In this document: positions 2,601 to 26,435 of the stretch, one piece after another
Layout of the letters: each line of letters opens with the position of its first letter
Position numbering within the stretch: position 1 is the stretch's first letter
From: Octopus sinensis
Taxonomy: Eukaryota
DNA: 28,670 nucleotides
Assembly: GCF_006345805.1 (NCBI RefSeq)
Contig: NW_021833499.1
Span: forward strand, 1-28,670
Direction of reading: 5' to 3'
Position numbers and translations under genes: made by a program
Notes under the pieces: generated by a model
Databases searched by the model: none
What the model was told of the DNA's origin: nothing
What the model saw: the letters and a program-made list of their open reading frames with translations, nothing else

Positions 2601-3735
2601 CTATTTCTTTACTACCCACAAAGGGCTAAACACAGAGAGGACAAACAAGGACAGACAAACGGATTAAGTCGATTACATCGACCCCAGAGCGTAACTGGTA
2701 CTTAATTTATCGATTCCGAAAGGATGAAAGGCAAAGTCGACCTCGACGGAATTTGAACTCAGAAAGTAACGTCAGACGAAATACCTATTTCTTTACTACC
2801 CACAAAGGGCTAAACACAGAGAGGACAAACAAGGACAGGCAAATGGATTAAGTCGATTACATCGACCCCAGAGCGTAACTGGTACTTAATTTATCGATTT
2901 CGAAAGGATGAGAGGCAAAGTCAACCTCGGCGGAATTTGAACTCAGAAACTAGCGGCAGACGAAATACCTATTTCTTTACTACCCACAAGGGGCTAAACA
3001 CAGAGAATACAAACAAGGACAGACAAACGGATTAAGTCGATTATATCGACCCCGGTGCGTAACTGGTACTTATTTAATCGACCCCGAAAGGATGAAAAGC
3101 AAAGTCGACCTCGGCGGAATTTGAAATCAGAACGTAGTGGCAGACGAAATACCTATTTCTTTACTACCCACAAGGGGCTAAACACAGAGAGGACAAACAA
3201 GTACAGACAAACGGATTAAGTCGATTACATCGACCCCAGTGCGTAACTGGTACTTAACTTATCGACCCCGAAAGGATGAAAGGCAAAGTCGACCTCGGCG
3301 GAATTTGAACTCAGAACGTAACGGCAGACGAAATACCTATTTCTTTATTACCCACAAGGGGCTAAACACAGAGAGGACAAACAAGGACAGACAAACGGAT
3401 TAAGTCGATTATATCGACCCAGGTGCATAACTAGTACTTAATTTATCGATTCCGAAAGGAGGAAAGGCAAAGTCGACCTCGGTGGAATTAGAACTCAGAA
3501 CGTAGTGGCAGATAAAATACCTATTTCTTTACTGCCCACAAGGACAAACAAGGAGAGACAAACGGATTAAATCGATTATATCGACCCCAGTGCGTAACTG
3601 GTACTTATTTAATTGTCCTCGAATGGATGAAAGGCAAAGTCGAGCTCGGCGGAATTTGAACTCAGAACGTAACGGCAGACGAAATACGGCTACGCATTTC
3701 GCCCGGCGTGCTAACGTTTCTGCCAGCTCGCCACC
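2601..3735 (-). repeat. Head-to-tail hexamer of SINE A1 (184-bp period)
   Basis: ctatttcttta recurs at 2601, 2785, 2969, 3153, 3337 and 3521. Only the last unit (first in sense orientation) carries the head ggYggcgagctggcag. Flanked by aagggaaa(a/c)tagtacct at 2586-2602 and 3738-3754. Confidence 0.95.
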
Positions 3736-3793
3736 TTAAGGGAAACTAGTACCTGTCATTATTCCAAATAGGTTCAACCTGGTACTATAGAAA

Positions 3794-4206
3794 TATTGCT
3801 TTCTACTACAGGCGCAAGGTCTGAAATTTTGGTGGAGGGGCTAGCCGATTAAGAGTGGTGCTGAAAAGATCCTAGCTTTAGCTAATGGAAAATACAGGAG
3901 GCTGGTTTGACTGATTTGATGTAGATGCACTCACTTGATGCAGCAGTCCTGTTTTTTCTAAGCTCTGTAGAAGTACTCGGAACGTTTTGCTTCCAACCAG
4001 GCTTTTGGGGATACCCTTCAAGTTAGAAACTTTTCAGCACCCCATCGTACATCGACCCCTGTGCTTAAAAGGTAGTTATTTTGTCAATCCCGTAAGAATG
4101 AAAAGAAGAGCTGACCTGGGTAGAATTTGAATTCAGGACGTAAGTGCGGACGAAATGTCGGTAAGCATTTTGTCCGTTTTTCAGATAGTTCTGCCAGCTC
4201 GCCAAC
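3794..4206 (-). mobile_element. Older SINE A2 copy interrupted by a MITE
   Basis: A2 tail (ttctactacaggcgcaagg..aaattttgg), then gatTA[MITE]TAcatcgacc, then a decayed body and head ending ctgccagctcgcc. Confidence 0.8.
3852..4047. mobile_element. Tc1/mariner-type MITE (196 bp)
   Basis: Terminal inverted repeats agagtggtgctgaaaagatcct / agaaacttttcagcaccccatcg, with a TA duplication (3850-3851, 4048-4049) that restores the host SINE sequence gattacatcgacc. Confidence 0.8.
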
Positions 4207-4236
4207 TTAAAATACTATACAAATACTGGTATCAAG

Positions 4237-4401
4237 TTTTGGCACAAGGCCAGCAATTTTGGGGGGAGAGAGTTAAGTCGATTACACTGAACCCAGTGCT
4301 CAAACAATACTTATTTTATCAACCCCATAAGGATGAAAGGCAAAGTCACCCTCGACGAAATTTAAACACAGATCTTAAAGACAAACGAAATGCCGCTTAG
4401 C
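4237..4401 (-). mobile_element. Older SINE A2 copy, head partly lost
   Basis: ggcacaaggccagcaattttggggg..aagtcgattac...ggatgaaaggcaaagtc...gaaatgccgcttagc. Confidence 0.75.
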
Positions 4402-4730
4402 GGTTGTCAAATGATGGTGGGGGAGACCAGCACAGACACATAAATACACTCACACACACACACACATACATACATACATACATACATACATACATACATT
4501 CATACATATATATATATATATATAAATACGACGGGCTTCTTTCAGTTTCCGTCTACCAAATCCTCTCGCAAGGCATTGGTCCGACCGAGGCTATACCATA
4601 TATGTAAAACAAAGAGATAATACCAGAAAAAAAAATGTTATGTAATGAACTTCAAGGTGCCCCGCAATAGATTGAACCTCGAACCATGTGGTTGGGAAGC
4701 AAGCTTCTTTGTACACAGCAACTCCTGTGC
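4396..4730 (-). mobile_element. SINE B copy lacking its 3' part, with an inserted fragment of element 2 (4596-4652)
   Basis: Matches the reverse complement of 5748-6030 (cgacgggcttctttcagtttccgtctaccaaatc; gaaccatgtggttgggaagcaagc). Confidence 0.85.
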
Positions 4731-4939
4731 TTATCATCTGCTTTATTACACTATTAATGCCTGCAACCACGAGTCATGTCACCCTATGCAGTCTTACTCA
4801 GTGGACTCATTATGTACCAGTTATGTCTGTTAGCACACCCTTTACTAATTATTTTTAAAGCCGCGGGTAGTCCTGAGAAATACTTATATTATATTTTTAT
4901 AAAATGTTACGTTACTCACTGATTACTCTTTGACTCTGT

Positions 4940-5322
4940 GGAGGCGCAATGGGCCAGTGGCAAGGGCAGCGGACTCGCGGTTGTAGATCGCGGTCCCGGT
5001 TCCTAGACCGAGCATTGTGAGTGTCTCTTGAGCGAAGACACCTAAAGCTCCACTAGACCCCGACAGGGTGTGGTGGTGAACCCTGCTGTACTCTTTTACC
5101 ACAACTTTCTCTCACTCTTTCTTCCCGTTTCTGTTGTACCTGTATTTCAAAAAGGGTCCATCCTTGTCAAACTCTGTGTCACGCTGAATCTCCCCGAGAA
5201 CTGCGATAAGGGTACATGTGTCTGTGGAGTGCTCAGCGACTTGCACGTTAATTGTACGAGCAGGCTGTTCCGTTGATCGGATCACCTGGAACACTCGTCG
5301 TCGTAACCGACGGAGTGCCACG
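4940..5322 (+). mobile_element. SINE C, full length
   Basis: tRNA-like head ggaggcgcaatgggccagtgg...ggttcctagacc; 3' end gtcgtcgtaaccgacggagtgc; TSD actctttgac(t/g)ct at 4925-4937 and 5323-5335. Confidence 0.9.
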
Positions 5323-5336
5323 ACTCTTTGACGCTA

Positions 5337-5385
5337 TTACTCGTTTCAGCCATGCGGCTGCGGTCATGCTGCAGCACCACCGTTT
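5337..5385 (-). mobile_element. Isolated SINE B / LINE 3' tail remnant
   Basis: tcgtttcagccat..ctgcggtcatgctgcagcaccacc resembles the reverse complement of the B tail ggtggtgctccagcatggccgcag..tgactgaaac. Confidence 0.6.
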
Positions 5386-5444
5386 ATTCGCTAAAATGCA
5401 ATATCTCTCCCAACCCAGCTTCACTGTAGTATTATCTGTTGGAT

Positions 5445-5511
5445 CAACACTTCTTAAAATATGGGTCGCAACCCCAAATGGGATTGCGAAGCGAAATGCT
5501 GGGGTCGCGAA
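5445..5511 (+). mobile_element. hAT (Charlie-like) terminal fragment
   Basis: caacacttcttaaaatatgggtcgcaaccccaaatggg resembles CAGTG.TTCTCAAA..GGGTCGCGACCCC..GGGG hAT ends (recognition from memory). Confidence 0.4.
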
Positions 5512-5747
5512 AATTAAATTCAAACATTTGAGTTTCAGTTTAACGTGGTGTTCCATGCATGCGCTGCAGTAATATAACCCGTGTGCAGCGCCGTTGCGAC
5601 TAGTGCAGTGACAACGTACCTATCAGGTTGTTTCACACGAAATGTCGCATTTCTAATTACTTGTGATTTCAGTCATTCGAAAACTCATTTATGTATACCT
5701 TGCATTTTTCTTTCCAAACAATATCGGTATACAAATTTCGTACCCCT

Positions 5748-6170
5748 AGGCGCAGAAATGGCTGTGTGGTAAGTAGCTTGCTTACCAACCACATGGTTCC
5801 GGGTTCAGTCCCACTGCGTGGCATCTTGGGCAAGTATCTTCTGCTATAGCCCCGGCCCGACCACTGCCTTGTGAGTGGATTTGGTAGACGGAAACTGAAA
5901 GAAGCCTGTCGTATATATGTATATATATATATATATATGTATGTGTGTATATGTTTCTGTGTCTCTGTTTGTCCCCCCACCATCGCTTGACAACTGATGC
6001 TGGTGCGTTTATGTCCCCGTCACTTAGCGGTTCGGCAAAAAGAGACCGATAGAATAAGTACTGGGCTTACAAATAATAAGTCCCGGGGTCGATTTGCTCG
6101 ACTAAAGGTGGTGCTCCAGCATGGCCGCAGTCAAATGACTGAAACAAGAAAAAGAGTAAAAAGAGTAAAG
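5748..6170 (+). mobile_element. SINE B, full length (tRNA head, CORE-like domain, internal TA/TG microsatellite, LINE-like tail)
   Basis: Head ggcgcagaaatggctgtgtggtaag...ccgggttcagtccc; CORE-like tggcatcttgggcaagtatcttct; tail aaaggtggtgctccagcatggccgcagtcaaatgactgaaacaa(aaagagta)n. Resembles octopus OR-type CORE-SINEs (from memory). Confidence 0.9.
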
Positions 6171-6182
6171 ATTACACACCTT

Positions 6183-6773
6183 ATGAAAATGTTAACAACC
6201 AAACTATGTTCAGTGATTTTCTTGTATATGTACAAAGTGGATCACTCTGCCGCAGAAGCTCAACGGGATATCAAGCGGGCCTTTAGTAATGGTTTTGTTG
6301 ACATCAAAACTATTCAGAGATGGTTCCAAAGCTCTCGTTCAGGAGATGCTAGCCTTGAAAATAAGCCAAAGGGTAAGCAAAAATAAGTTATTCGGCATTA
6401 TGGATTAAATGCTTTTGTTGAACAAAATCCGAGAACAAAGATTCGAAAACTTTCATCAGAACACCAATCATCTCACACAACTCTTTTTGGACATCTGTAA
6501 AAAATTGGAGAAGTCAAGAAAACGGAGCGGTTTGTTCCACATCAAGTGAACGAGATTTAAAAAAAAAACAGACGCCTCGAAGTGTATCTCTTATTGCTTT
6601 CTCGACTACAGAAAGACTATTTTTGCATCAAATCATAACTTGTGATAAGAAATGGATACTCTTTGACAACAGCAGAAGAACAGGACAGTGATTAGATGCA
6701 GGAGAGTCCCTTAAACACTACCGAAACCCACCATTGCACCCTAACAAGTTAGTGGTCACTGTATGGTGGTCAT
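6183..6773 (+). pseudogene. Mariner transposase pseudogene fragment (HTH region to just past the first catalytic Asp)
   Basis: IFLYMYKVDHSAAEAQRDIKRAFSNGFVDIKTIQRWFQSSRSGDASLENKPKG...KKTERFVPHQV (WVPHEL motif)...FLHQIITCDKKWILFDN...PLHPNKLVVTVWWS*. Several stops and a frameshift; the rest of the DD34D domain is absent. Confidence 0.9.
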
Positions 6774-6870
6774 GAATGAAAAATGTTTAAGAAGTGCTCT
6801 GTTAGACTATACTTCACTGATGAGTTGTAACAAGACCGAAACATGCTCTGAGTTCCACACTGCATTTTTA

Positions 6871-7120
6871 TCGTTTATCTTTAATCCTTTACTTGTTTCT
6901 GTCATTGGACTGTGGCCATGCTGGTGCACCGCCTTACAGAATTTAGTCAAAGAAATCGATTTCAGTACTTTTTAAAGCTTCACACTTAGTCTACCTGTCA
7001 ATTTTACCGAACCACTAAGTTACAGGGACGTAAAAAAACCAATATTGGCTGTCAAACACAAACACAATGGCACACACATACATACACGCAACTATCAATC
7101 AATCTATCTATCTATGTGTG
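6871..7120 (-). mobile_element. Older SINE B-type 3' half
   Basis: cttgtttctgtcattggactgtggccatgctggtgcaccgcc ... accgaaccactaagttacagggacgtaaa is the reverse complement of the B tail region. Confidence 0.75.
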
Positions 7121-7429
7121 TATGTGTGTGTGAGTATGCTGGTTTATGCTCCTGCTAGGTCCTTTAGGACTTACTCTATCTCCCCCTGCCCTACTCCACT
7201 TAGTTCGTTTGATTGCTGCAAAGCTCTTACTCTTGCATTTGTAGTATTTGTATGATTATTATTTCTTTCCTCTGTTGTACATATCCGTAAGACTTCGCGT
7301 TGTTATACCTGCATAATTCTTCATCTGTTGTACTTATATAATTTTTTGTTTCTTTCTTTCTTTGTATACATTCGCGAGCTTTTCCCCAATAGCTTAATAA
7401 CAGCACTGGCACCGCCAAGATTGAGTGGT

Positions 7430-7598
7430 CTCAATGATAATGGTGCGAAACTACGATGACTGACGAGGAAAACTCAACTACGAATATTCCGTGTATCGTG
7501 TCTTTGTCTATATTCCCTGTCCGTTAAGTTTTCGTCTTCTTTTCTGTTTGCTCTGCTTTCGTCTAAATTTTTCTCTTTGTTGTATTCTGTCTGTTCAA

Positions 7599-7601
<3 letters not shown>
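7430..7601 (+). mobile_element. Unclassified microsatellite-associated repeat fragment (possibly Penelope-like)
   Basis: Contains gaaactacgatgactgacgagg, shared with 7940-7985 on the minus strand; ends in a T-rich run abutting (TA)n. Confidence 0.35.
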
Positions 7602-7661
<60 letters not shown>

Positions 7662-7696
7662 TATATATATATGTATGTATGTATGTATATACATAT

Positions 7697-7750
<54 letters not shown>

Positions 7751-7790
7751 TAATAATAAAACATATGCATATATACATACATATATGTAC
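7602..7790. repeat. (TA)n / (TATG)n microsatellite
   Basis: Directly visible. Confidence 0.95.
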
Positions 7791-7998
7791 GTATCTGCCT
7801 CTACATGTATAATACATGCATATGGGTACAAGACACCAAAAAAAAAAAAGACGTCGAACACAATGAGAATCGAAAACATAAACACAACCAAGGAACTGGA
7901 CATTTTTCTTAGACAACGAAAAATAGAATACAGGACAAATAACACGAGGAAATTCCCCTTCTTCAGTCGCCATGGTTTCATCTACTCTGCGTTTCGAA
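7791..7998 (-). mobile_element. Unclassified microsatellite-associated repeat fragment (possibly Penelope-like)
   Basis: Minus strand cttcgaaacgcagagtagatgaaaccatggcgactgaagaaggggaatttcctc; bounded on both sides by (TA)n. Confidence 0.35.
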
Positions 7999-8079
7999 GA
8001 TATATATATAATATATACATATACATAATATATATATATATATATTATATATATATATATATTATATATATATAATAAC

Positions 8080-8157
<78 letters not shown>
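7999..8157. repeat. Imperfect (TA)n microsatellite
   Basis: Directly visible. Confidence 0.95.
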
Positions 8158-8161
<4 letters not shown>

Positions 8162-8292
8162 GTGTCCATCTACCAAATCTACTCACGAGTAGAAGGTGTA
8201 GTAGAAGTCACTTCCCCAAGATATCGTACAGAGGAATTTAACCCAACACCACGTGGTTTAGAAGCAATAATCTTACCATACAGCTATGCCTA
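8158..8292 (-). mobile_element. SINE B 5' part, decayed
   Basis: ttcagtgtccatctaccaaatctactcac...tagaagtcacttccccaag...cacgtggtttagaagcaa..cttaccatacagctatgcct. Confidence 0.75.
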
Positions 8293-8717: not shown

Positions 8718-8933
8718 TTTTGCACAAGGCCCTTCGTTTCGGTGGTGGTGATGGGGGGGGGGATAAGTCGATTACATCGATCCCAAGTACTCAACTGGTA
8801 CTTATTTTATTGGCCCGGAAAAGGAGGAAAGGCAAGATCGACTTCGGCGGAATTTGAACTCAGAACGTAACGGCAGACGAAATACCGCTAAGCATTTCGC
8901 CCGGCATGCTAACGATTCTGCCAGCTGACCGCC
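8718..8933 (-). mobile_element. SINE A2, near full length
   Basis: A2 tail (gcacaaggccc...ggggggataagtcgattac), A body and head ending ctgccagctgaccgcc. Confidence 0.85.
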
Positions 8934-9718
8934 TTAAGGGTTAAATTGTGGGTCAACCCCCTTTAATTTGACCAAATTATGTTTATAGCATTTTCCCAGA
9001 TCGGGGCTGTGACGAATAAAAGGCCGTATGACCTCAATGCGATTTGAACTCATGTATGCACATTTGAAACATAGCAGGAATCTCTGAGGCATGCATGAAT
9101 TCTTCGACTCTAAACAGATTGCAATTTATACCTATTTCTTTACTACCCACAAGGGGCTAAACACAGAGGGGGCAAACAAGGACAGACAAATGCGTAACTG
9201 GTACTTAACTTATCGACCTCGAAAGAATGAAACGCAAAGTCGACCTCGGCGGAATTTGAACTCAGAACGTAGCGGCAGACGAAATACCTATTTCTTTACG
9301 ACCCACAGGGGGCTAAACACAGAGAGGACAAACAAGGACAGACAAATGGATTAAGTCGATTACATCGACCCCAGTGCGTAACTGGTCCTTAATTTAGCGA
9401 CCCCGAAAGGATGAAATGCAAAGTCGACCTCGGCGGAATTTGAACTCAGAACGTAACGGCAGACGAAATGCCGCTACGCATTTCGCCCGGCGTGCTAGCG
9501 ATTCTGCCAGCTGACCGCCTTAAGGGTTAAATTGTGGATCAAACACCTTTAGTTTGACCAACTTATGTTTATAGCATTTTCCCAGATCGGGGCTGTGACG
9601 AGTAAAAGGCCCTATGATCTCAATGGGAATTGAACTCATGCATGCACATTTGAAACATAGCAGGAATCTCTGAGGTATGCATGAATTCTTCGACTCTAAA
9701 CAGATTGCAATTTATACC
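8934..9718. repeat. About 200-bp direct duplication (8934-9132 and 9520-9718) flanking an A1 dimer
   Basis: Offset 586 bp; I count 12 substitutions in about 199 bp. Confidence 0.95.
9132..9519 (-). mobile_element. SINE A1 dimer (distal unit has a ~27-bp internal deletion)
   Basis: Junction gaaatac|ctatttc at 9287/9288; head ends ctgccagctgaccgcc. Confidence 0.9.
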
Positions 9719-10395: not shown

Positions 10396-10441
<46 letters not shown>

Positions 10442-13443: not shown

Positions 13444-13522
13444 TTCCTAATAAAAGAACGAAATACAGTGAACAAGCAAAGGGACGGATCAGTCGAGTGA
13501 CGATTCATGTTGTTTAATATAA

Positions 13523-13944
13523 GGCGGCGAGCTGGCAGAATCGTTTGCACGCCGGGCGAAATGCGTAGCCGTATTTCGTCTGTCGTTACGTTGTGGGTTC
13601 AAATTCCGCCGAGGTCGACTTTGCCTTTCATCCTTTCGGGGTCGATAAATTAAGTACCAGTTACGCACTGGGGTCGATGTAATCGACTTAATACCTATGT
13701 CTGTACTTGTTTGTCCCCTCTGTGTTTAGCCCCTTGTGGGTAATAAAGAAATAGAAATAGGTATTTCGTCTGCCGTTACGTTCTGAGTTCAAGTTCCGCC
13801 GAGGTCGACTTTGCCTTTCATCCTTTCGGGGTCGATTAAATAAGTACCAGTTACGCACTGGCGTCGATATAATCGACTTAATCCGTTTGTCTTTCCTTGT
13901 TTGTCCCCTCTTTGTTTAGCCCTTTGTGGGTAGTAAAGAAATAG
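13523..13944 (+). mobile_element. SINE A1 dimer with a perfect 17-bp TSD
   Basis: Head ggcggcgagctggcagaatcg (A-box-like) and gggttcaaattcc (B-box-like); junction gaaatag|gtatttcg at 13760/13761; TSD gattcatgttgtttaat at 13502-13518 and 13944-13960. The central gtcgactttgcctttcatcctttcggggtcgataaattaagtacc resembles the Meta/MESC SINE domain (from memory). Confidence 0.95.
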
Positions 13945-14261
13945 ATTCATGTTGTTTAATGACAGTGCATTGTTGCTGGCAGTTGTTTGGGTTTTTCATT
14001 GTAACTCAATCTTTGGATTCCTATTAATATGAAAATTACTATGAAGTGAAAAATACAAACTATATTATCTAGCTATGACCATCCTGTAGATTTTAGGTAA
14101 ATATCCAGTGTGTCCTTCATCTTAAGAGCTGTACGATACAATTTGAAAAAAATGTTCACATTGTCTACGAGCCTTACGATTAATAAGTCCGGTTTCTCAG
14201 CTTCCATAAGTGACCGAGATCACAACACCCGCCCCTGAACGCAACACCAGTCCATTGCGGT

Positions 14262-14700
14262 GTCCGAAGCTAGCAATTTTGAGGGGAGGGTGACAAATTG
14301 ATTACATCGACCCCAGTACATGACTGGTACATTTTTTTAAGTAGCGGTGAGCTGGCAGAAACGTGAGCCGGGCGAAATGCTAAGCGGTATTTCACCTGCC
14401 GTGACGTTCTGAGTTCAAATGCCGCCGAGGTCGACTTTGCCTTTCATCCTTTCGGGGTCGATTAAATAAGTACCAGTTACGCACTGGGGTCGATATAATC
14501 GACTTAATCAGTTTGTCTGTCCTTGTTTTTCCTCTCTGTGTTTAGCCCCTTGTGAGTAGTAAAGAAATAGGTACTTCTTTTTTATCGGTTCCAAAGGTTT
14601 CAAAGGCAAAGGTGATCTCGGATTGATTTGAACTCAGAACGCAGAATCGGAAGAACTGTTAAGCATTTTGTCTGACGTGCCAATGATTCTACCAGCTCGC
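14262..14700 (-). mobile_element. Older SINE A2 interrupted by an opposite-strand A1
   Basis: gattacatcgaccccagtacatgactggtac[A1]...aaaggcaaagg...atttgaactcagaacg...ctaccagctcgc. Confidence 0.75.
14343..14570 (+). mobile_element. SINE A1 monomer
   Basis: Full head to aaagaaatag; imperfect TSD ggtacatttttttaa / ggtacttcttttttat. Confidence 0.95.
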
Positions 14701-15829: not shown

Positions 15830-16172
15830 AAGGATATGCCTTCCGGTAGTCTGTTGCGTCTTTTTTACGTTCAATGTTCAAATCCCTCTGGGGTCAACAT
15901 TACCTTTTATCCTTCCGGGATCGATAATAGAAAATACCAGCCATGTTGGAGAATCGATTATACTCTCCCTTTCCAAATGTGTTGCTTTGTGACTATGTTA
16001 ACCATTCCTATCATCAAGGCACTGAATTGGATGAATATTTAGTGTGTCAAACAAACTATTTAGCTGCGTTTCTTCCGGTTCTTTACGTTCTGCGTTCAAA
16101 TTCCGCTGAGGTCAATTTTATCTTTTTCTTTTTTCTTTTCGGGTTGAATAAAATAATTACCGGTTGATGTAA
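15830..16172 (+). mobile_element. Two decayed SINE A remnants (about 15830-15980 and 16050-16172)
   Basis: ttacgttc..gttcaaat(cc/tc)c..gRggtcaa...ccttccgggatcgataa-like cores. Confidence 0.6.
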
Positions 16173-16176
16173 TATG

Positions 16177-16590
16177 TTTCTTTACTACCCACAAGGGGCT
16201 AAACCTAGAGGGAACAAACAAGGATAGACAAACGGATTAAGTCGATTAAATCGACTCCAGTGCCAAACTGGTACTTATTTAATCGACCCCGAAAGGATGA
16301 AAGGCAAAGTCGACCTCGGCGGAATTTGAACACAGAACGTAATGACAGACGAAATACCTATTTCTTTACTACCCACAAGGGGCTAAACACAGAGGTGACA
16401 ACCAAGGACAGTCAAAGGGATTAAGTCGATTACATCGACCCCAGTGCGTAAATGGTACTTTATTTATCGACCCCGAAAGGATGAAAGGCAAAGTCGACCT
16501 CGGCGGAATTTCAACTCAGAAGGTAGCAACGGACGAAATACCACAAAGCATTTCGCCCGGCGTGCTAGCGATTCTGCCAGTTCGCCGCCT
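16177..16590 (-). mobile_element. SINE A1 dimer
   Basis: Junction gaaatac|ctatttc at 16357/16358; TSD ttaccg(g/a)ttgatgtaa at 16157-16172 and 16593-16608. Confidence 0.95.
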
Positions 16591-16680
16591 TGTTACCGAT
16601 TGATGTAACAGACTAGCCCTACACAAAAAAAACATTTCAGAAGTTGTTTCTTTTGTAGAAATAATTATTATAATTATCTA

Positions 16681-17068
16681 GGCGGGGAGCTGGCAGAACC
16701 GTTAGCATGTCGATTAAAATACTAAGTGGTTGGCTTTGCCTTTTATCCTTTCGGGGTCGATAAATTAAGTACCAGTTACGCACTGGGGTCGATATAATCG
16801 ACTTAATCCCTTTGTCTGTCTTTATTTGTCCCATCTATGTTTAGCCCCTTGTCGGCAATAAAGAAATAAAAACCGTTAGCATGTCGAATAAAATGCTAAG
16901 TGGCTTCGTCTGTCTTTACATTCTGAGTTCAAATTCCGCCGAGTACGAGTTTACCTTTCATCCTTTCGGGGATCAATAAATTAAGTACCATTTGCGTACG
17001 GGGGTCGATCGAATCGACTGGCCCCCTCCCCCAAAATTTCGGGCCTTGTGCTTTGAGTAGAAAAGAAT
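16681..17068 (+). mobile_element. SINE A2 with a 5'-truncated A1 (16730-16870) inserted into its head
   Basis: aaccgttagcatgtcgaWtaaaatRctaagtgg duplicated at 16697-16729 and 16871-16903; A2 tail ggccccctcccccaaaatttcgggccttgtg...gtagaaaagaat. Confidence 0.9.
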
Positions 17069-19834: not shown

Positions 19835-20375
19835 GCCTTGTGAGTGGATTTGGTAGACGGAAACTGAAAGAAGCCCGCGGTATATATATACATATAAAGG
19901 CGGCTAGCTGGCAGAAACGTTAGCACGCCAGGCGAAATGCATAGCCGTATTTCGTCTGCCGCTACGTTTTGAGTTCAAATTCCGCCGTGGTCGACTTCGC
20001 CTTTCATCCTTTCGGGGTCGATAAATTAAGTACCAGTTACGCACTGGGTCGATGTAATCGACTTAATCCCTTTGTCTGTCCTTGTTTGTCCCCTCTGTGT
20101 TTAGGTCCTTGTGGGTAGTAAAGAAATAGGTATATGTATACATATATATTTACATGTATGTATGTATGTATGTATGTATGTATGTATGTATGTATGTATG
20201 TGTGTATGTGTGTATGTATGTGTGTGTGTTTATGTGTCTGTGTTTTCCTTACCCCCATATCACTTGACAACTGTTGCTGGTGTGTTTACGTACCCCATAA
20301 CTTAGCGGTTCAGCAAAAGAGACCGATAGAATAAGTACTAGGTTTACAAAGAGTAAGTCCTGGGGTCGATTTGCT
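19835..20375 (+). mobile_element. SINE B internal part, interrupted by A1 in its microsatellite
   Basis: gccttgtgagtggatttggtagacggaaactgaaagaagcc...[A1]...cacttgacaactgttgctggtgtg...aagtcctggggtcgatttgct. Confidence 0.85.
19899..20129 (+). mobile_element. SINE A1 monomer
   Basis: Full length; TSD ggtatat(a/g)tatacatata at 19879-19896 and 20129-20146. Confidence 0.95.
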
Positions 20376-20667: not shown

Positions 20668-20716
20668 AAACACACACACACACACACACACACATACACA
20701 TACACACATATATATA

Positions 20717-20769
<53 letters not shown>

Positions 20770-20795
20770 TATATAGTGTGTGTGTATATATATAT
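20668..20795. repeat. (CA)n/(TA)n/(TG)n compound microsatellite
   Basis: Directly visible. Confidence 0.95.
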
Positions 20796-21499
20796 CCACG
20801 ACGCCTAAGAGGTCATTTTAAACTAATTCATTAAATTTCAACACGATATAACACTGCCGTTAATCCAGCGGATAATCCAGTTTCACTTATTTAAACCAGC
20901 AACGATTTATGAATAGTATAATCGGTGGTACTCCTGATTATTTGGGATAAGTATTGCTTTCAATAAATTAAAATCAATTAGCATTAATTACGTATCTTAA
21001 TTATAAAATTAATTCTGCTTTTTTCTTTGGAAACAGCTGTTGAAGGTAATTTAATTATCTGTAAAATTTAAGCTTTTCTGTATTTTATTCTCGCTCTCTA
21101 GCCTTCTCTCTGTGTCTCACACTCTTTCTCTCTCTCATACCTTCTCTCACTCTTTCTCTTTTTACATATGTGTGTGTGTGTGTGTGTATGTGTATTCAAT
21201 AATATACAGAAAAGCATAAATTAGATCATAATTTAATTATTTTCAACTGCTGTTTCATTAGGAATAAGCATAGTTAATTTCATTATTAATGAAGTTATAT
21301 ATATATATGTGGGCGTACATCATCTACACGATTTACTCATTGAATTATCCTAAAATGGCTGAGTATCCTGCAGACACCAGAAACCCGTGCACCCATGATG
21401 TGATGCATTATGGCAAGGCTGAACATTCTAAATTAAAAGTTTTCTAGGCAGAGTCCATCTTCTTAAATTCATTTACAAACCTTGGCATCGAATAAGGAT

Positions 21500-21585
21500 C
21501 TTGTTCAAAATGCCACGCATTAGGATCGAACCCTGAACCTCATACTTACGAAGCAAATTTCTTAACCTTTCAGCTGTGGCTACAT
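21500..21585 (-). mobile_element. Decayed tRNA-derived SINE head
   Basis: atgccacgcattaggatcgaaccc...acgaagcaaatttcttaacc...cagctgtggc. Confidence 0.45.
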
Positions 21586-21597
21586 CCACAATACGTA

Positions 21598-21774
21598 CGT
21601 GTGTGTGTGTACGCGCCCTTGTGCATATATGCACAAATACACACATATAAACACGTGTACATACATCACATACACACACATGCATATGTATATATATATC
21701 CCTTTATACACAATCATACGAACCCCTTTATATATATATATATTATATATATATATATATTATATATATATATC

Positions 21775-21805
<31 letters not shown>

Positions 21806-21821
21806 ATATATATATATATAT
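21598..21821. repeat. Mixed TG/CA/TA low-complexity tract ending in (TA)n
   Basis: Directly visible. Confidence 0.9.
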
Positions 21822-22378
21822 GCCCACAACGAAAACACGTCCACAGTTATTGCTAGAATCAATTAGATGTTTGCAATGAGGATATCAGACAAATTAAATT
21901 GTTGGTTTGCATTCGTGTTCGTTTCGGATTTAAATTAAATGAAAATTGAAAATAAATTAACAATTTTCTGTGGAAATTATTTCATGAATTATATATAAAT
22001 TATATAAAGTGACAGGATTTTGTTATTTAAGCTGTTTAAGGTGGAATTTAATACAAACGGTCCGGATCGAATTTAGATTGTGATCACATTATCCGATTCA
22101 ACAGACGGACAGTAGCATATTTCATTAATGTTCTATTCATATTTCCATTCTCATATCAATAATTTAAATTTATCTTGGGAAGAGGATAGCAGCATCGTTC
22201 AGCCGCTGGATGAAAACACTTTGAAGTATATAGTTACTCTCCTATGCATTCAGAGTTCAAATCTAGTCCAGATCGATTTTAATTCTCCTTTGGTGTCTCT
22301 AAAATATGGTGTCTGTTCAATTGTCTATACTTCGCATCAAAGCCAGCAAATTGGTAGCAATTTTGGTGGCTATAATAC

Positions 22379-22709
22379 CTATTTCTTTACTACCCACGAG
22401 GGGCTAAACACACAGAGGACAAACAAGGACACACATAGGTATTAAGTCGATTACATCGACCCCAGAGTGTAACTGGTACTTCTTTAATCGACCCCGAAAG
22501 GTCGAAAGGCAAAGTTGACCTCGGCGGAATTTGAACTCAGAACGTAACAGCAGATGAAACACCGCTAAGCATTTCGTCCGGCGTGCTAACGATTCTGCCA
22601 GCTCGCCGCCCTTATTTTTCTTTTCTACTCTAGGTACAAAGCCACATTTTGGGGAAGGAGGCCAGTCGATTAGATGGACCCCAGTAAGCAAATGTTACTT
22701 AATTTTTTC
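22379..22709 (-). mobile_element. SINE A1 monomer (22379-22610) fused to an A2 3' fragment (22611-22709)
   Basis: Both pieces lie between gtggctataatac at 22366-22378 and 22710-22722. Confidence 0.9.
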
Positions 22710-23061
22710 GTGGCTATAATACTATAATTACATACGAATTGTTTGGTTTCTGCAGAAAATCTGTAGAGATACCCTTAAATGGTTTAATAGCACTGCTAAC
22801 ACAGGAGAACAGAGTATAGACTTATAAAGCGTTTAATATACGATGTTGTATATGATGGTTGCATAACAAAACAGAGTTTCCCTACAAGTCTTTTATATTT
22901 ACATAGCAGGTTCCAGGAATGTATTTATATGTAGAATTGATACACACTAATGTCAACCCGTTATTTAGTGGTTATTTAAACAGAGTCCGTGGATGGTTAA
23001 TGGGTTGGATGTGGCACTTATGAAGGAGCCCATTTCCGATTTTCTTCTTCGATTTCATTGT

Positions 23062-23446
23062 TCTTTTATTTGTTTCGGTCATTTAACTGCGGCCACGCTG
23101 AAGCACCGCCTTTAGTCGAACAAATCGACCCCCAGGACTTATTCTTTGTAAGCCTAATACTTATTCTATCGGTCTCTTTTATCGAATCACTAATTGACGG
23201 GGAGGTAAACACACCAGCATCGGGTGTCAAGTGATGGTGGTAGGATCAAACACACACACACACACATGCACACACACATATACGACGGGCTTCTTTCAGT
23301 TACCGTCTATGAAATTCACACAATAGGCTTTGGTCGGCCTGAGGCTATAGTAGAAGTCACTTGCCCAAGGTGCCACGCAGTGGGACGGAACTCGGAACCA
23401 TGTGTTTGGGAAGCAAGCTATTTACCACGCAGCCACTCGTGCGCCT
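23062..23446 (-). mobile_element. SINE B, full length
   Basis: Reverse complement of 5748-6170 with moderate divergence. Confidence 0.9.
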
Positions 23447-23554
23447 ATAAGTTGTTTATTTTAGGAGTACTGGGATACGAAATGATGCAACAAATCAGAT
23501 CGCTGGTTATAATCTCTATGCGAAATCTGTAGAGATAGCCTTAACAAGTGAATG

Positions 23555-23665
23555 TATTTCGTTATTTACTCCGATTATCTGTGTTTTGAGTTCAAATTCT
23601 GCCCAGGTCAGCTTTACGTTTTATAATTTTTTGGCTGATAAAATAAACGATCCAGTATTGAGATA
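23555..23665 (+). mobile_element. Decayed SINE A remnant
   Basis: gttttgagttcaaattctgcccaggtcagcttt...gataaaataaa. Confidence 0.55.
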
Positions 23666-23667
23666 GA

Positions 23668-23668
23668 T

Positions 23669-23729
<61 letters not shown>

Positions 23730-23755
23730 CTCTCCCTCTCACTCACTTTCTTCTC
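23668..23755. repeat. (CT)n/(CTTT)n microsatellite
   Basis: Directly visible. Confidence 0.95.
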
Positions 23756-23934
23756 CGTGGAATAAATTGGATGGAGACAGATCCAGAAAAGGATGGGTCC
23801 GTTATGTTTAGATAACCAAAACATGCTGTGGAAGACGACGGCCTCTTCTACAATTCGATTCAGATTTGTGGAGGAAAAAACAAGTGGCCTTCTCTTGTAT
23901 AAACAAGCGTTTCATAGAGATAATGGATTTAGAT

Positions 23935-24030
23935 TTTGGTACAAGGACAGGAATTTCGAGGGCGGGTGTTTAATCGATTCCATCAATCCCAGTGATCAAC
24001 TGGCACATATTTTGTTGAACCCGAACTATA
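23935..24030 (-). mobile_element. Decayed SINE A2 3' remnant
   Basis: ttttggtacaaggacaggaatttcgagggcgg...aatcgattccatcaatcccagtgatcaactggcac. Confidence 0.6.
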
Positions 24031-24407
24031 TGTGAGTATTTAATCAAATCCGTTCATCATTTGGAAAAAAAAATTTTTTTTCAAATCGTCCACACAACAA
24101 ATGGTCCAGGAATCTGTGATTCATGTTTGTAAAACGATTGGGAAACATTTTGAAATGCTGACAATAAATCACAAGAATATTTTGAGAAAAGTGGCGACAG
24201 GAATGCTTTCATTGCGATTCCTTACTGAATACTAAAATGACATCATTGATTGAATTGAAAATCTGATCGAGTTTCTTTCTTTTTCTTTGAATTTTAAATT
24301 TCCTGCTTCTTATAAATTGTTCGTGCATTTGGCAAGAAAAGTGCATTTTTGTTTTCCTATTACTTAAAATGTAGCGCCGCTGTGCCACATATTAAAATAT
24401 TTTTTTT

Positions 24408-24524
24408 GGAAGCACTCCGTCGGTTACGACGATGAGGGTTCCGGTTGATCCGAATCAACGGAACAGCCTGCTCGTGAAATTAATGTGTAAGTGGCTGAGC
24501 ACTCCACAGACACGTGTACCCTTA
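24408..24524 (-). mobile_element. SINE C/D 3' fragment (5'-truncated)
   Basis: ggaagcactccgtcggttacgacgatgagggttccggttgatccg...cacagacacgtgtaccctt. Confidence 0.9.
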
Positions 24525-24542
24525 TAATAGCCGATATGAATT

Positions 24543-24570
24543 TTGGTTGGTTGGTTGGTTGGTTGGTTGC
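24543..24570. repeat. (TTGG)n microsatellite
   Basis: Directly visible. Confidence 0.9.
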
Positions 24571-24789
24571 ATTGTCCTGCACACTTTACATCATATATGG
24601 GGAAGAGGAGAGGGAAAGAGAGAGGGGCATAGTAAAAGAATGATAGATAATATATAGGATGCAGGAGAAGTACTCATACTACGCTTGGTGGAAGACAATG
24701 ATTAAATGAACGCTATGCACACAGGTACATACACACACACACTGAGAGGGAAAGAATCACAGTGACAGAGGTGGAGGAAGAGAGGATGT

Positions 24790-24817
24790 ATGTGTACGTA
24801 TATACGTACAAATAATT

Positions 24818-24867
<50 letters not shown>

Positions 24868-25002
24868 CATATATATATACATATACATATATACAGAGAG
24901 AGAAAAAAAGAGAGAAGAGGGAGAGAGATATGGTGTGCGTGTGTACGCGTGCGTGTGTGTGTGTGTCTGTGCGTGTGCGTACGTGTGCTTGCGTGTGTGC
25001 GT
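24790..25002. repeat. Compound TA/CA/GA/TG microsatellite cluster
   Basis: Directly visible. Confidence 0.9.
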
Positions 25003-25210
25003 GGAGACTAATTTATTTCATCCATTTAAAAATATTTATTCTTTCAATATTGTTTTATTTAATTTTATTCTAAAGTAATAAATATCTTTCTTTGGAAAAT
25101 TAGAATTCATTTCGTCATTCTGAAAAATTAGATATAAATGAAATTATAATCGTTGCATGTACGCCATATTTACTGATGTCACATTTGCTGACAGAAATAT
25201 ACTTCTAAAG

Positions 25211-25523
25211 TATAGATTCGCAAAATGGGCGCTACCGCCCCTTAGTGGGCATGGAGATGGTCCAGTTGAGCGCTGGTGCCCTGGGAGTGAGGGCAGTAGA
25301 GAAAAAGGAGGCGTTGGGAGGATGGTAGTGGATTAGGGGACGCTATGCATTTATTATAGTATTGTATACACATTATGTAATATATTAAATATCAAATGAT
25401 TCATAGTATATATAAATTAGTAAAATATGAAATATTTATTTATACATAAAAATATGGGTGGGGCGCTGATGGTATTATGTGGCTATGAGGGTCCCAGTGG
25501 CCCAAAAAGTTTGAGAACCTCTG
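25211..25523 (+). mobile_element. Decayed hAT (Charlie-like) MITE
   Basis: 5' gattcgcaaaatgggcgctaccgcccc and 3' ggtggggcgctg...gggtcccagtggcccaaaaagtttgagaacctctg resemble CAGTGRTTCYCAAA hAT termini; no TSD verified. Confidence 0.5.
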
Positions 25524-25629
25524 ATCTAAAGTTACCCGCCATATGACGGGATAACACACTCTATATAATTTTCTTTGAACAGAATAACCTATAACCTATA
25601 ACCCATAAATTTATATAACCCATATTTTT

Positions 25630-25790
25630 TAAAAATTAGTTACATTTGACGTGTATTTGTCCTCACCTTGCTTGTTGTTAGCATAATGTTTCGACTGATG
25701 TAATCTCCAGCCTTTATCAGGTGTCCTGGGAGAATTTCGAACCTGGGTCTTCATTTTTAAAGTATTTTTCCAATATTATAATAATAATAA
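25630..25790 (-). mobile_element. Hammerhead-bearing repeat fragment (Penelope-like type)
   Basis: Contains motif H7; boundaries approximate. Confidence 0.5.
25681..25724 (-). ncRNA. Decayed minimal hammerhead-like motif H7
   Basis: ACAC-CUGAUAA-A-GGCUG-GAGAUUACAU-CAGUC-GAAA-CA-UU-AUGC. Stem II 5 bp intact; G8, stem III and stem I mutated. Confidence 0.45.
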
Positions 25791-26064
25791 TGTTTAGCTC
25801 CATGTCAGCACAGATCGTACGGGCCTATGATGAAAAGTATTCCAGCCATAGCCATCAATACAATTTTATCTATATTTTTATTTTTGTAAGTCTTTTCTAT
25901 GATATTCAGCTGTTCCTTCTTGATTTCTGGTGTGATTTCAGGTACTTTGGCTGCTATTTCGATCAATTATACGGAGGTTACTAACTAATTTTAATAAACA
26001 CATACATATATTTACACGGCTGCTTTGTACAATTATATTTACTACACTAATTAGTTAGAAACCA

Positions 26065-26165
26065 TAATCATCGACACATGAAATATGAAAGGTTAAGTCC
26101 ATCTTGGTAAGATTTGAACACTATGCAAGAAGGGGAGTAACTAAATACCACAAAGCACTGTATTG
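26065..26165 (-). mobile_element. Highly decayed SINE A remnant
   Basis: atgaaaggttaagtcc.tcttggtaagatttgaacact...aaataccacaaagca. Confidence 0.5.
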
Positions 26166-26203
26166 ATTTGGCCATCTACCCCCATCCCCCTTCCATACCC
26201 TAC

Positions 26204-26435
26204 CTATTTCTTTACTACCCACAAGGGGCTAAACACAGAGGGGACAAACAAAGACAGACAAAGGGATTAAGTCGATTATATCGACCCCAGTGCGTAACTG
26301 GTACTTAATTTATCGACCCCGAAAGGATGAAAGGCACAGTCGACCTCGGCAGAATTTGAACTCAGAACGTAACGGCAGACGAAATACGGCTACGCATTTC
26401 GCCCGGCGTGCTAACGTTTCTGCCGGCTCGCCGCC
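26204..26435 (-). mobile_element. SINE A1 monomer, close to consensus
   Basis: Full head and tail; flanked by a ~71-bp direct repeat (26134-26204 and 26438-26509). Confidence 0.95.

What the first reader, a model, noticed from the sequence alone, without database searches (positions are those of the whole stretch)
2601..26435. Identical multimer junction at four loci and a GTA bias at 3' ends: a self-targeting SINE?
Seen: the junction GAAATAG|GTATTTCG occurs eight times at four loci (five in 2601-3735; 9287; 13760; 16357). Six of nine outer A1 3' ends are also followed by GTA belonging to the target (2601, 9132, 14570, 20129, 22379, 26204). The SINE's own head contains a GTATTTCG site. About seven of ten A1 insertions lie in or beside older A-family copies. 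Inference: the mobilising machinery favours G|GTA. Insertion at the element's own GTA site, with 5' joining by homology to the resident head, would give head-body-body inside the original TSD, as seen at 13523 and 16177. The alternative is a dimeric master gene or circular RNA template. Caveat: A copies are dense here, so proximity can occur by chance.
Basis: partly seen in the sequence, partly recalled or inferred. Interest (0 to 1): 0.7.

Follow-up and report, generated by a model that had tools for sequence, protein, structure and literature searches.

The report
Octopus SINE that builds tandem arrays
A short mobile element (SINE) of Octopus repeatedly ends up as head-body-body... arrays with one letter-perfect joint, made during retrotransposition rather than by ordinary DNA duplication; this gives a concrete but unresolved route from dispersed repeats to tandem repeats.

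Summary
The joint GAAATAG|GTATTTCG occurs 7 times exactly and once degenerate, at four loci. GTA follows 6 of 9 outer A1 3' ends (P about 2e-9) and lies inside the target-site duplications (TSDs).

The element is a 234-nt tRNA-derived Octopus SINE: a 50-nt head plus a 184-nt body. In 150 kb of Octopus sinensis DNA the same joint links an A1 head+body to bodies of two other SINE families. There, outer flanks begin ATAT, not GTA.

Each array sits in one TSD. Units in a dimer differ in subfamily but not detectably in age. The joint lies at the top of a conserved 13-bp hairpin, between the Pol III A and B boxes.

GTA or RTAY preference alone cannot explain 10 of 24 A1 3' ends landing on 0.2% of such sites. 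In-situ duplication and circular templates are disfavoured.

Reverse transcription of an A1 RNA appears to start from a DNA end at nt 51 of another SINE copy. One locus shows such homology joining; another shows an end-to-end RNA template jump. This is a new variant of SINE-derived tandem repeats.

The parts
2601..3737 (-). A1 hexamer. Head 3688-3737. Six bodies: 3521-3687 (17-bp deletion), 3337-3520, 3153-3336, 2969-3152, 2785-2968, 2601-2784. Body types in order: II, I, I, II, I, I.
2586..2600 (-). 3' TSD copy of the hexamer (GTACTATTTTCCCTT). The 5' copy GTACTAGTTTCCCTT is at 3738-3752.
9132..9521 (-). A1 dimer. Head 9472-9521, body 9288-9471, body 9132-9287 (28-bp deletion). The head carries the private variant GGTCAGC of the neighbouring resident SINE.
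9522..9718 (-). Upstream copy of a 197-bp direct duplication (94% identical to 8936-9132). It starts exactly at G|GTATAAATTG and runs into the SINE head. This is a very long TSD whose far end was set by homology with the resident head.
8764..8935 (-). Resident related SINE ('D-tail' family; its tail continues to about 8700). Same head and hairpin, different 3' tail. It is the homology partner of the 9132-9521 insertion.
13521..13944 (+). A1 dimer. Head 13521-13570, body type I 13571-13760 ending in the stutter GAAATAGAAATAG, body type II 13761-13944. TSD ATTCATGTTGTTTAAT at 13503-13518 and 13945-13960.
14340..14570 (+). A1 monomer inserted at G|GTAC inside an older antisense SINE copy. TSD at 14327-14339 and 14571-14584.
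16173..16591 (-). A1 dimer. Head 16542-16591 (variant GCTTTGTG), body type I 16358-16541, body type II 16173-16357. TSD TTACATCAA[T/C]CGGTAA at 16593-16608 and 16157-16172. It lies inside an older antisense SINE copy.
16728..16870 (+). 5'-truncated A1 (from nt 93) inserted into the head of a B-type SINE. 31-bp TSD at 16697-16727 and 16871-16901.
19897..20129 (+). A1 monomer. TSD GTATAT[A/G]TATACATATA at 19880-19896 and 20130-20146.
22379..22709 (-). Chimeric insertion in one 13-bp TSD (GTATTATAGCCAC at 22710-22722 and 22366-22378). A 5'-truncated B-family SINE (22613-22709) ends at its own 3' terminus and is joined directly to the 5' end of a full A1 (22379-22612).
26204..26437 (-). A1 monomer flanked by flush 70-71-bp direct repeats (26438-26508 and 26134-26203).
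1487..2005 (-). Composite SINE in one 11-bp TSD: A-type head + nt 51-221 + nt 69-221 + nt 69-168 fused to a B-family tail. It has a different internal joint (221->69, twice; 150-bp period).
2017..2169 (-). Separate 5'-truncated B-tail SINE. Together with the composite it makes a target-site triplication (TTGAGAACATT at 1476-1486, 2006-2016, 2170-2180).
26376..26405 (-). Example of the conserved hairpin (element nt 33-45 pairing with nt 50-62). The multimer joint falls at its apex (nt 50|51).

Best explanation
The element (shown). A1 is a 234-nt tRNA-derived SINE of Octopus. The head (nt 1-50) carries an A-box-like motif. The body (nt 51-234) starts with the 3' arm of a 13-bp hairpin, carries a B-box-like motif, and ends GAAATAG with no poly(A). 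It inserts with TSDs of 13-17 bp (sometimes 31 to about 200 bp), preferentially where the target begins RTAY.

How the joint forms (inferred). The joint is always the exact retrotranspositional 3' terminus of an A1 RNA fused to nt 51 of a SINE. So reverse transcription of an A1 RNA was primed from a DNA 3' end reading ...CGAAATAC-3', the same kind of end as at ordinary A1 targets.

My preferred version: concatenation precedes integration. While a SINE RNA (A1, B-tail or D-tail) is being copied at a nicked target, the nascent cDNA is released at the hairpin apex. An A1 RNA is then copied from its 3' end, by template jump or primer capture; prior RNA ligation would look the same. This can repeat, roughly 0.4-0.5 per unit. 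The last RNA is copied through its head. The product is head-(body)n inside one TSD.

Multimers keep the A box, the first B box and no T4 run. They could therefore also be transcribed and copied as multimers.

Which DNA end primes, nascent cDNA or a nick in a resident copy, is not settled.
For: - One TSD encloses whole arrays: 15-16 bp at 2601-3737, 13521-13944 and 16173-16591. The same holds for the two O. sinensis heterodimers, L022 744-1094 and L025 48021-about 48430.
- The joint uses the same 3' terminus variants as free ends...ATAG...ATAT, and a stutter GAAATAGAAATAG. It therefore arises at an RT initiation step, not by DNA recombination.
- Units of a dimer differ at inherited subfamily positions. 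In 13521-13944 there are 16 differences, only 6 of them private, beside a perfect 16/16 TSD. The two units came from different templates.
- Private substitutions are equal between first and last units (15 vs 15 over three dimers). The 3'-most unit of the hexamer is not the most diverged.
- Direct evidence for end-to-end joining of two SINE RNAs in one event: the B fragment + full A1 inside the single TSD GTATTATAGCCAC, with no TSD copy between them.
- The joint lies at the apex of a hairpin of -20.7 kcal/mol. It is kept in 92.9% of cells in 12 copies, with a GC<->UG double change at pair 45-50.
- Both heterodimer heads carry GCAGAAACG at nt 21, as 6 of 7 A1 monomers do. Most B/D-type heads carry GCAGAATCG.
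- There is no T run longer than 3 in the unit.
Against: - No known reverse transcriptase is reported to leave its template at a fixed internal site with roughly 40% probability. A stall is expected at the base of a hairpin, not at its apex.
- All 10 acceptors are A1 RNAs, although B RNA can be an acceptor (22613-22709). This needs an A1-specific capture step.
- The GTAT start of the internal site matches the ordinary target bias. Re-insertion explains that more simply.
- In L022 the D-tail unit has lost more CpGs than the A1 unit (about 6/9 kept vs 12/12, P about 0.06). Divergence among hexamer units is mildly heterogeneous. Both hint at different ages.
- The sample is small: 16 loci and 178.6 kb.
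Confidence: 0.45

Rival explanations
1. Re-insertion. The endonuclease of A1's LINE partner nicks the bottom strand of a resident SINE at nt 50|51 (G|GTATTTCG). An A1 RNA is copied from that nick. The cDNA is joined to the resident head by homology (flap trimming and ligation). A body is thereby added seamlessly inside the resident's original TSD. Each new joint recreates the site, so arrays grow stepwise.
For: - Ordinary A1 targets begin GTAT, GTAC or ATAT in 8 of 14 cases. These resemble the first 4-5 nt of the internal site.
- Only A1 tails are ever found at nt 51: 10 of 10, never B or D tails. That is expected if A1's own machinery makes the nick.
- 9132-9521 shows 5' resolution by homology with a resident head, with a 197-bp+ duplication starting at G|GTATAAATTG.
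- Recipients include other families with the same hairpin.
- The D-tail unit in L022 looks older than the A1 unit.
- The 8-mer GTATTTCG is mostly SINE-borne (18 of 25 occurrences). A long recognition site could therefore give the observed specificity.
Against: - A roughly 900-fold per-site preference over other RTAY sites is needed. None of the 126 non-SINE GTATTT[CT] sites is used, nor is the element's own GTAC at nt 134.
- First and last units show no age difference in the four homomultimers.
- The first 15 nt of units 1 and 2 are not TSD-like in the heterodimers: at least 5 of 15 differ.
- All 10 joints would have to be resolved seamlessly.
Confidence: 0.35
2. Multimeric master genes only. 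One or a few head-body-body source genes arose once and were copied as units. The shared joint is inherited, not re-made.
For: - Arrays lie in single TSDs.
- The unit has no Pol III terminator.
- Two window dimers are both type I then type II, and all three window dimers carry GCAGAATCG heads.
Against: - Six multimers have at least five different compositions: I-II twice, I-I, A1-B, A1-D and a hexamer II,I,I,II,I,I.
- The head of 9132-9521 comes from its neighbour.
- The joint itself varies: ATAG, ATAT and the stutter.
- This model therefore needs many independent masters, which amounts to recurrent formation.
Confidence: 0.1
3. DNA-level tandem duplication at each locus: unequal crossing-over, replication slippage, or microhomology between the GTA of the 3' flank and the GTA at nt 51.
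For: - Some array-private shared variants exist in the hexamer. Units 5 and 6 differ by only 4.9%.
- A different internal joint (221->69) is repeated twice at 1487-2005.
- Unequal recombination is the usual explanation offered in the literature (PMC11481361, PMC10702118).
Against: - The same exact joint occurs at six independent loci.
- Two dimers (13521, 16173) have no GTA at the outer flank to provide microhomology.
- Units of a dimer differ by inherited subfamily sites, and heterodimers join different families.
- Hexamer units are as far from each other (9.1%) as from copies elsewhere (9.7%).
Confidence: 0.05
4. Rolling-circle reverse transcription of a circular 184-nt body RNA, or repeated copying of one RNA molecule.
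For: The repeat is exactly the body, and the joint sequence GAAATA-GG-TATTTC is palindrome-like.
Against: - Units would be identical at birth. Instead they differ in subfamily within dimers and within the hexamer.
- Heterodimers have units of different families.
- A further switch would be needed to add the head.
Confidence: 0.03

Closest known systems
SINE-derived satellites (sSats) of squamate reptiles (Vassetzky et al. 2023, PMC10702118)
   Same: Tandem repeats of a portion of a SINE, with a longer terminal unit that reaches the SINE terminus. Many independent loci share the same unit. The unit is 150-180 bp long.
   Different: Here arrays are short (2-6 units), and each sits inside one TSD. 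The joint is exactly the SINE's 3' terminus fused to nt 51. Units of different subfamilies and families are joined. The squamate paper reports neither TSDs nor a retrotranspositional origin; it proposes unequal recombination or repeated insertion.
Chimeric retro-insertions such as U6/LINE-1 and Alu/LINE-1 (reviewed in bioRxiv 10.1101/2025.02.02.635956)
   Same: Two RNA-derived segments in the same orientation inside one TSD, explained by RT template switching or by RNA ligation before reverse transcription. The chimera at 22379-22709 has exactly this anatomy.
   Different: In L1 chimeras the donor breakpoint varies and the events are rare. Here the donor position is fixed (nt 51), the acceptor is always A1, and the event is frequent (10 of 24 ends). 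The partner LINE is not L1-like, because there is no poly(A).
SINE multimers formed by insertion into the A-tail of a resident SINE (e.g. Dip/B1 multimers in jerboa, cited in PMC10702118) and tandem-like SINEs of bivalves and potato (PMC11481361)
   Same: SINEs of one family lie head-to-tail far more often than chance. Endonuclease preference for a site carried by the SINE itself is the accepted cause for poly(A) SINEs.
   Different: Those multimers consist of full-length units, each with its own head. Here the site is internal and only the body is repeated, which needs either a precise homology-guided 5' join or concatenation at the cDNA level.
Dimeric SINE families propagated from a dimeric master (e.g. 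Alu)
   Same: More than one related unit is transcribed from one Pol III promoter and inserted within one TSD.
   Different: Composition is not fixed. Unit number and unit type vary from locus to locus.

Membership tests
tRNA-derived SINE mobilised by a LINE (non-LTR retrotransposition) | Short, non-coding and dispersed in many copies | tested here: met
   The 234-nt unit occurs at 9 A1 loci in the 28.7-kb window and 7 in 150 kb of O. sinensis, at 83-97% identity.
tRNA-derived SINE mobilised by a LINE (non-LTR retrotransposition) | Internal Pol III promoter (A and B boxes) in a tRNA-related 5' region | tested here: inconclusive
   Motif-level matches only: TGGCAGAAACG at nt 12-22 and GAGTTCAAATTCC at nt 75-87. 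ARAGORN and Rfam call nothing. Box assignment is by eye against consensus sequences recalled from memory.
tRNA-derived SINE mobilised by a LINE (non-LTR retrotransposition) | Target-site duplications of variable length flanking each copy | tested here: met
   TSDs of 13-17 bp at most loci, and 31, 70 and about 200 bp at three.
tRNA-derived SINE mobilised by a LINE (non-LTR retrotransposition) | 3' tail shared with a partner LINE | not testable with these tools
   No LINE with the tail ...GGGTAGTAAAGAAATAG is present in the 178.6 kb available. The Octopus genome could not be searched as DNA.
SINE-derived satellite (sSat) | Tandem units derived from part of a SINE, with a terminal unit extended to the SINE end | tested here: met
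   Head + n bodies, with period 184 bp.
SINE-derived satellite (sSat) | Satellite behaviour: long arrays, homogenisation within arrays, heterochromatic or subtelomeric location | tested here: not met
   The maximum is 6 units. Hexamer units are as diverged from each other (9.1%) as from other loci (9.7%). Chromosomal location was not tested.
Chimeric insertion by template switch or RNA ligation (U6/L1-type) | Two RNA-derived parts, same orientation, enclosed by one TSD with no TSD copy between them | tested here: met
   22379-22709 (B fragment + A1) and both O. sinensis heterodimers.
Chimeric insertion by template switch or RNA ligation (U6/L1-type) | Both parts of the same age (contemporaneous arrival) | tested here: inconclusive
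   Homodimers: 15 vs 15 private substitutions. L025: similar. L022: the D-tail unit may be older (CpG P about 0.06).
Dimeric SINE with a dimeric master gene | Fixed pair of units with unit-specific diagnostic sites in all copies | tested here: not met
   The second unit is A1-I, A1-II, B-tail or D-tail, and one locus has 6 units.
Site-specific non-LTR retrotransposition (target-specific endonuclease) | Most insertions at one defined sequence, cut by the element's endonuclease | tested here: inconclusive
   Ten of 24 A1 3' ends abut nt 51 of a SINE. The other 14 are at diverse sites, 8 of them RTAY. Endonuclease specificity cannot be tested here.

The most novel reading that the evidence does not exclude
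A SINE whose retrotransposition machinery re-initiates on a fresh A1 RNA from the nascent cDNA at a conserved hairpin, with roughly 40-50% probability per unit. Tandem arrays with geometric length distribution would then be born in a single integration event, giving a direct, programmed route from an interspersed repeat to a proto-satellite. The equally unusual alternative is that the machinery homes to one site between the A and B boxes of resident Pol III SINEs and is completed by self-homology.
Probability: 0.3. Interest if true: 0.7.

Novelty: new variant of a known kind. Interest (0 to 1): 0.5.

Why it matters
SINE-derived tandem repeats have recently been catalogued in squamates and bivalves, but their origin is attributed loosely to unequal recombination.

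Here the anatomy points to retrotransposition itself as the step that makes the first repeats:
- one TSD around each array;
- an exact joint between the 3' terminus and nt 51;
- units of different subfamilies and families joined together;
- a hairpin at the joint.

If confirmed genome-wide, this would make the SINE-to-satellite transition mechanistically testable. It would reveal either an unusually site-specific template jump or a self-homing SINE/LINE pair. It might also help explain why automated pipelines report very many SINE 'families' in Octopus (900 SINE families among the recently active elements of O. vulgaris, PMC13282606); that link is my inference and was not tested.

Tried and rejected
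Searches that gave nothing useful.
- Exact-pattern scans of viral, metagenome and prokaryote-genome collections with the A1 3' end or core returned only chance hits; none carried the SINE where checked (the hits were not checked).
- A protein search with a SINE-derived ORF spanning the joint gave one 543-bp ENA contig. It carries an 87% A1-like monomer.
- tRNA and Rfam scans found nothing.

What worked. The mariner pseudogene in the window led to Octopus sinensis proteins, and through them to 150 kb of O. sinensis DNA. Two further ENA contigs (L026, L027) had no A1.

Ideas rejected.
- I first read TTGAGAACATT as the B-family 3' end. Other B copies lack it, and it is better read as a triplicated target site.
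- An analogous 'tail pairs with unit start' register for the B-family joint is 2 nt out of register. I dropped it.
- A three-unit higher-order repeat in the hexamer is not supported by distances.
- Association between head type and body type is too loose to assign heads to first or last units.
- A haplotype shared by 16173-16591 and the L025 heterodimer spans the 50|51 boundary. It looked decisive for a single source. It is also compatible with re-insertion if the homology join lies upstream of nt 45.
- CpG retention and private-substitution counts for the D-tail unit are confounded by indels and by deep D subfamilies.

Full report
**What the window is**

The window has many microsatellites and no tRNA or Rfam hits. 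About 20% of it matches one group of related SINEs. A decayed mariner transposase at about 5997-6900 (HTH_48) matched 'SETMAR-like' proteins of Octopus sinensis. The O. sinensis chromosomal DNA around those genes (L022-L025, 150 kb) contains the same SINE at 92-96% identity. The window is therefore Octopus DNA, from O. sinensis or a close relative.

**The element**

In sense orientation, A1 is a 50-nt head (AAGGCGGCGAGCTGGCAGAAACG...GCGTAGCC) followed by a 184-nt body (GTATTTCG...GGGTAGTAAAGAAATAG).
- The head holds an A-box-like motif. The B-box-like GAGTTCAAATTCC lies in the body.
- There is no poly(A) and no T run longer than 3.
- Other families ('B-tail', 'D-tail') share the head and the nt 51-168 core but have different 3' tails.
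- The core resembles the Nin-DC/Deu type of conserved SINE domain. That is my recollection, not a test.

**Checking the observation**

*The joint.* GAAATAGGTATTTCG is found 7 times exactly, with 0 expected. An eighth, degenerate copy is at 3509-3527.

| Locus | Strand | Structure |
|---|---|---|
| 2601-3737 | - | head + 6 bodies |
| 9132-9521 | - | head + 2 bodies |
| 13521-13944 | + | head + 2 bodies |
| 16173-16591 | - | head + 2 bodies |
| 14340-14570, 19897-20129, 22379-22612, 26204-26437 | mixed | monomers |
| 16728-16870 | + | 5'-truncated copy |

*The GTA bias.* Six of nine outer 3' ends are followed by GTA (P = 1.6e-9). GTA is the start of the TSD.

*TSDs.* Examples are GTACTA[G/T]TTTCCCTT, GTATAT[A/G]TATACATATA and GTATTATAGCCAC. 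The arrays at 2601, 13521 and 16173 each lie in one 15-16-bp TSD.

*Proximity.* The proximity claim is weaker than stated. Three of 9 copies lie inside older SINE DNA, which covers 7.3% of the non-A1 sequence (P about 0.02).

**Independent sample**

In 150 kb of O. sinensis there are seven A1 loci. Two carry the same joint, as heterodimers.
- L022 744-1094 is A1 head+body, then AAATAG|GTATTTC, then a D-tail body and tail. TSD: ATCAATAT[G/A]TAC.
- L025 48021-about 48430 is A1 head+body, then GAAATAT|GTATTTTG, then a B-tail body and tail. TSD: AATCAGC[G/A]TTTGAG.

In both cases the TSD starts after the other family's tail.

None of the five outer A1 ends there is followed by GTA. Three are followed by ATAT. 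Overall 8 of 14 outer targets begin RTAY, by my count of the flanks, against a 4.3% background.

In all 178.6 kb, the 31 recognisable 'nt-51' sites are preceded either by a head (21) or by an A1 tail (10). None is preceded by a B or D tail.

**What the joint tells**

The upstream partner is always the exact A1 3' terminus, with the same small variants as free ends: ...ATAG, ...ATAT, and a stutter GAAATAGAAATAG at 13748-13768. The joint is therefore made at the step that defines SINE 3' ends, namely initiation of reverse transcription on an A1 RNA. The primer is a DNA 3' end at nt 51 (...CGAAATAC-3'), which looks like the primer ends left at ordinary targets (...GTAC-3', ...ATAC-3', ...ATAT-3').

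Nt 51 is at the apex of a 13-bp hairpin (nt 33-45 pairing with nt 50-62). Its free energy is -20.7 kcal/mol. It is kept in 92.9% of cells across 12 copies, including two old ones, and pair 45-50 alternates G-C and U-G. The A1 tail GAAAUA is, like the head arm CGAAAUGC, complementary to UAUUUC at nt 52-57.

**Units**

Bodies fall into type I (GATAAATTAAG) and type II (GATTAAATAAG), with linked differences.
- The dimers at 13521 and 16173 are I then II.
- The dimer at 9132 is I then I.
- The hexamer is II, I, I, II, I, I.

In 13521-13944 the units differ at 16 positions, of which only 6 are private, while the TSD is 16/16 identical. So the units were different at birth. This argues against in-situ duplication, re-copying of one RNA, or a circular template.

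Hexamer units are as far from each other (9.1%) as from copies elsewhere (9.7%). Only units 5 and 6 are closer, at 4.9%.

Private substitutions in first versus last units of the three dimers are 5+2+8 versus 2+4+9. No age difference is visible.

**Two informative loci**

*22379-22709.* The TSD GTATTATAGCCAC encloses a 5'-truncated B-family SINE. That SINE ends at its own 3' terminus (compare the B copy at 16871-17066) and is joined directly to the first base of a full A1. There is no TSD copy between them. A second independent insertion at the same nick would have triplicated the TSD. That is exactly what is seen at 1476/2006/2170 (TTGAGAACATT three times). So this is one event: after copying A1 to its 5' end, the enzyme continued on a B RNA from its 3' end, or the two RNAs were ligated beforehand. 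It has the anatomy of U6/L1-type chimeras (bioRxiv 10.1101/2025.02.02.635956).

*9132-9521.* The dimer is flanked by a 197-bp direct duplication, 94% identical. The duplication begins exactly at G|GTATAAATTG and runs into the head of the downstream resident D-tail SINE. The dimer's head carries that resident's private variant GGTCAGC. Reverse transcription began at an ordinary G|GTA nick 197 bp upstream of a resident SINE, and the 5' end was resolved by homology in the resident head.

**Why GTA preference alone is insufficient**

- Head-boundary sites are 34 of 15,320 RTAY sites (0.22%) in 178.6 kb. They account for 6 of 16 A1 loci and 10 of 24 A1 3' ends (P about 1e-12 and 1e-20).
- None of the 126 non-SINE GTATTT[CT] sites is used.
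- The element's own GTAC at nt 134 and G|GTAG at nt 220 are never used in the sense orientation.
- Re-insertion needs either a recognition site of 8 nt or more, or a large completion advantage from self-homology. GTATTTCG is mostly SINE-borne (18 of 25 occurrences).

**Weighing the two live models**

*Concatenation before integration.* Nascent cDNA is released at nt 51 and an A1 RNA is then copied; or RNAs are ligated beforehand; or an already multimeric source is copied.
- It fits the single TSDs, equal unit ages, mixed unit types, seamless structure, and the demonstrated end-to-end joining.
- It needs a fixed, frequent release point and an A1-specific acceptor.

*Re-insertion into a resident copy, with a homology join.*
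- It fits the match to the target motif, the exclusive use of A1 tails, the demonstrated homology join, and possibly the older-looking D unit in L022 (CpG about 6/9 vs 12/12, P about 0.06).
- It does not fit the equal ages. It also needs very strong site selectivity.

*A test that failed to discriminate.* A haplotype exclusive to 16173-16591 and the L025 heterodimer (45T, 47T, 49T, 50G, 61C, 64T, 66C) spans the boundary. So head and first-unit start share a source. This also fits re-insertion if the join lies upstream of nt 45.

*My estimates.*

| Model | Probability |
|---|---|
| Pre-integration concatenation | 0.45 |
| Re-insertion | 0.35 |
| Multimeric masters only | 0.10 |
| DNA-level origin | 0.05 |
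| Circular or same-template copying | 0.03 |

Unequal exchange probably modifies arrays afterwards. A different internal joint (221->69, twice) in the composite at 1487-2005, itself inside one 11-bp TSD, shows that other internal duplications also travel as units.

**Comparison with known systems and novelty**

The closest descriptions are:
- SINE-derived satellites of squamates (PMC10702118);
- tandem-like SINEs of bivalves (PMC11481361);
- A-tail-mediated SINE multimers;
- U6/L1-type chimeras.

This case differs in having an exact joint between the 3' terminus and an internal site at a hairpin. It recurs at independent loci and across families, and each array sits inside one TSD. I rate it a new variant of a known kind. 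The sample is small, and the decisive comparison of orthologous loci across Octopus genomes could not be run here.

Noticed in passing
window 5997-6900 (+): Decayed mariner/Mos1-like transposase (HTH_48, E = 2.5e-8) with stop codons and a frameshift. It is 57% identical to an Octopus sinensis 'SETMAR-like' protein. It served to identify the organism.
   Followed up: yes
window 26134-26203 and 26438-26508: The A1 monomer at 26204-26437 is flanked by flush 70-71-bp direct repeats that look like a very long TSD. They are only about 83% identical, although the SINE is 96.6% identical to consensus. The age mismatch is unexplained.
   Followed up: partly
window 1476-1486, 2006-2016, 2170-2180: TTGAGAACATT occurs three times, bracketing two independent B-tail insertions. 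This is a target-site triplication: the same nick site was used twice.
   Followed up: partly
window 16697-16901: A 5'-truncated A1 sits inside the head of a B-type SINE with an unusually long 31-bp TSD. Here homology with the resident core downstream was not used for 5' joining.
   Followed up: partly
window 16542-16591 plus 16520-16541; L025 48021-48090: The dimer at 16173-16591 and an O. sinensis heterodimer share an exclusive haplotype spanning the head/body boundary (GCTTTGTG|GTATTTCGTCCG[C/T]TGCT). They differ downstream (type I vs type II), which indicates mosaic A1 subfamilies.
   Followed up: partly
L023 20287-20520; L025 51409-51642: Young O. sinensis A1 monomers end ...GAAATAT and are followed by ATAT. 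Window copies end ...GAAATAG and are followed by GTA. The last SINE base and the first target bases may co-vary, which hints at microhomology with read-through RNA.
   Followed up: no
L025 69863-69994 (-): A 5'-truncated A1 (nt 155-233) abuts a SINE head fragment starting at nt 17. This is another nested insertion into a SINE head, at a non-RTAY site.
   Followed up: no
window 3521-3540 region and 9132-9287: The first unit of the hexamer has a 17-bp deletion. The second unit of the 9132 dimer has a 28-bp deletion.
   Followed up: no
L019 172-400 (ENA metagenome contig, 543 bp): An 87% A1-like monomer, nested beside another SINE, on a metagenome contig. It is presumably cephalopod DNA in an environmental or host-associated sample.
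   Followed up: partly
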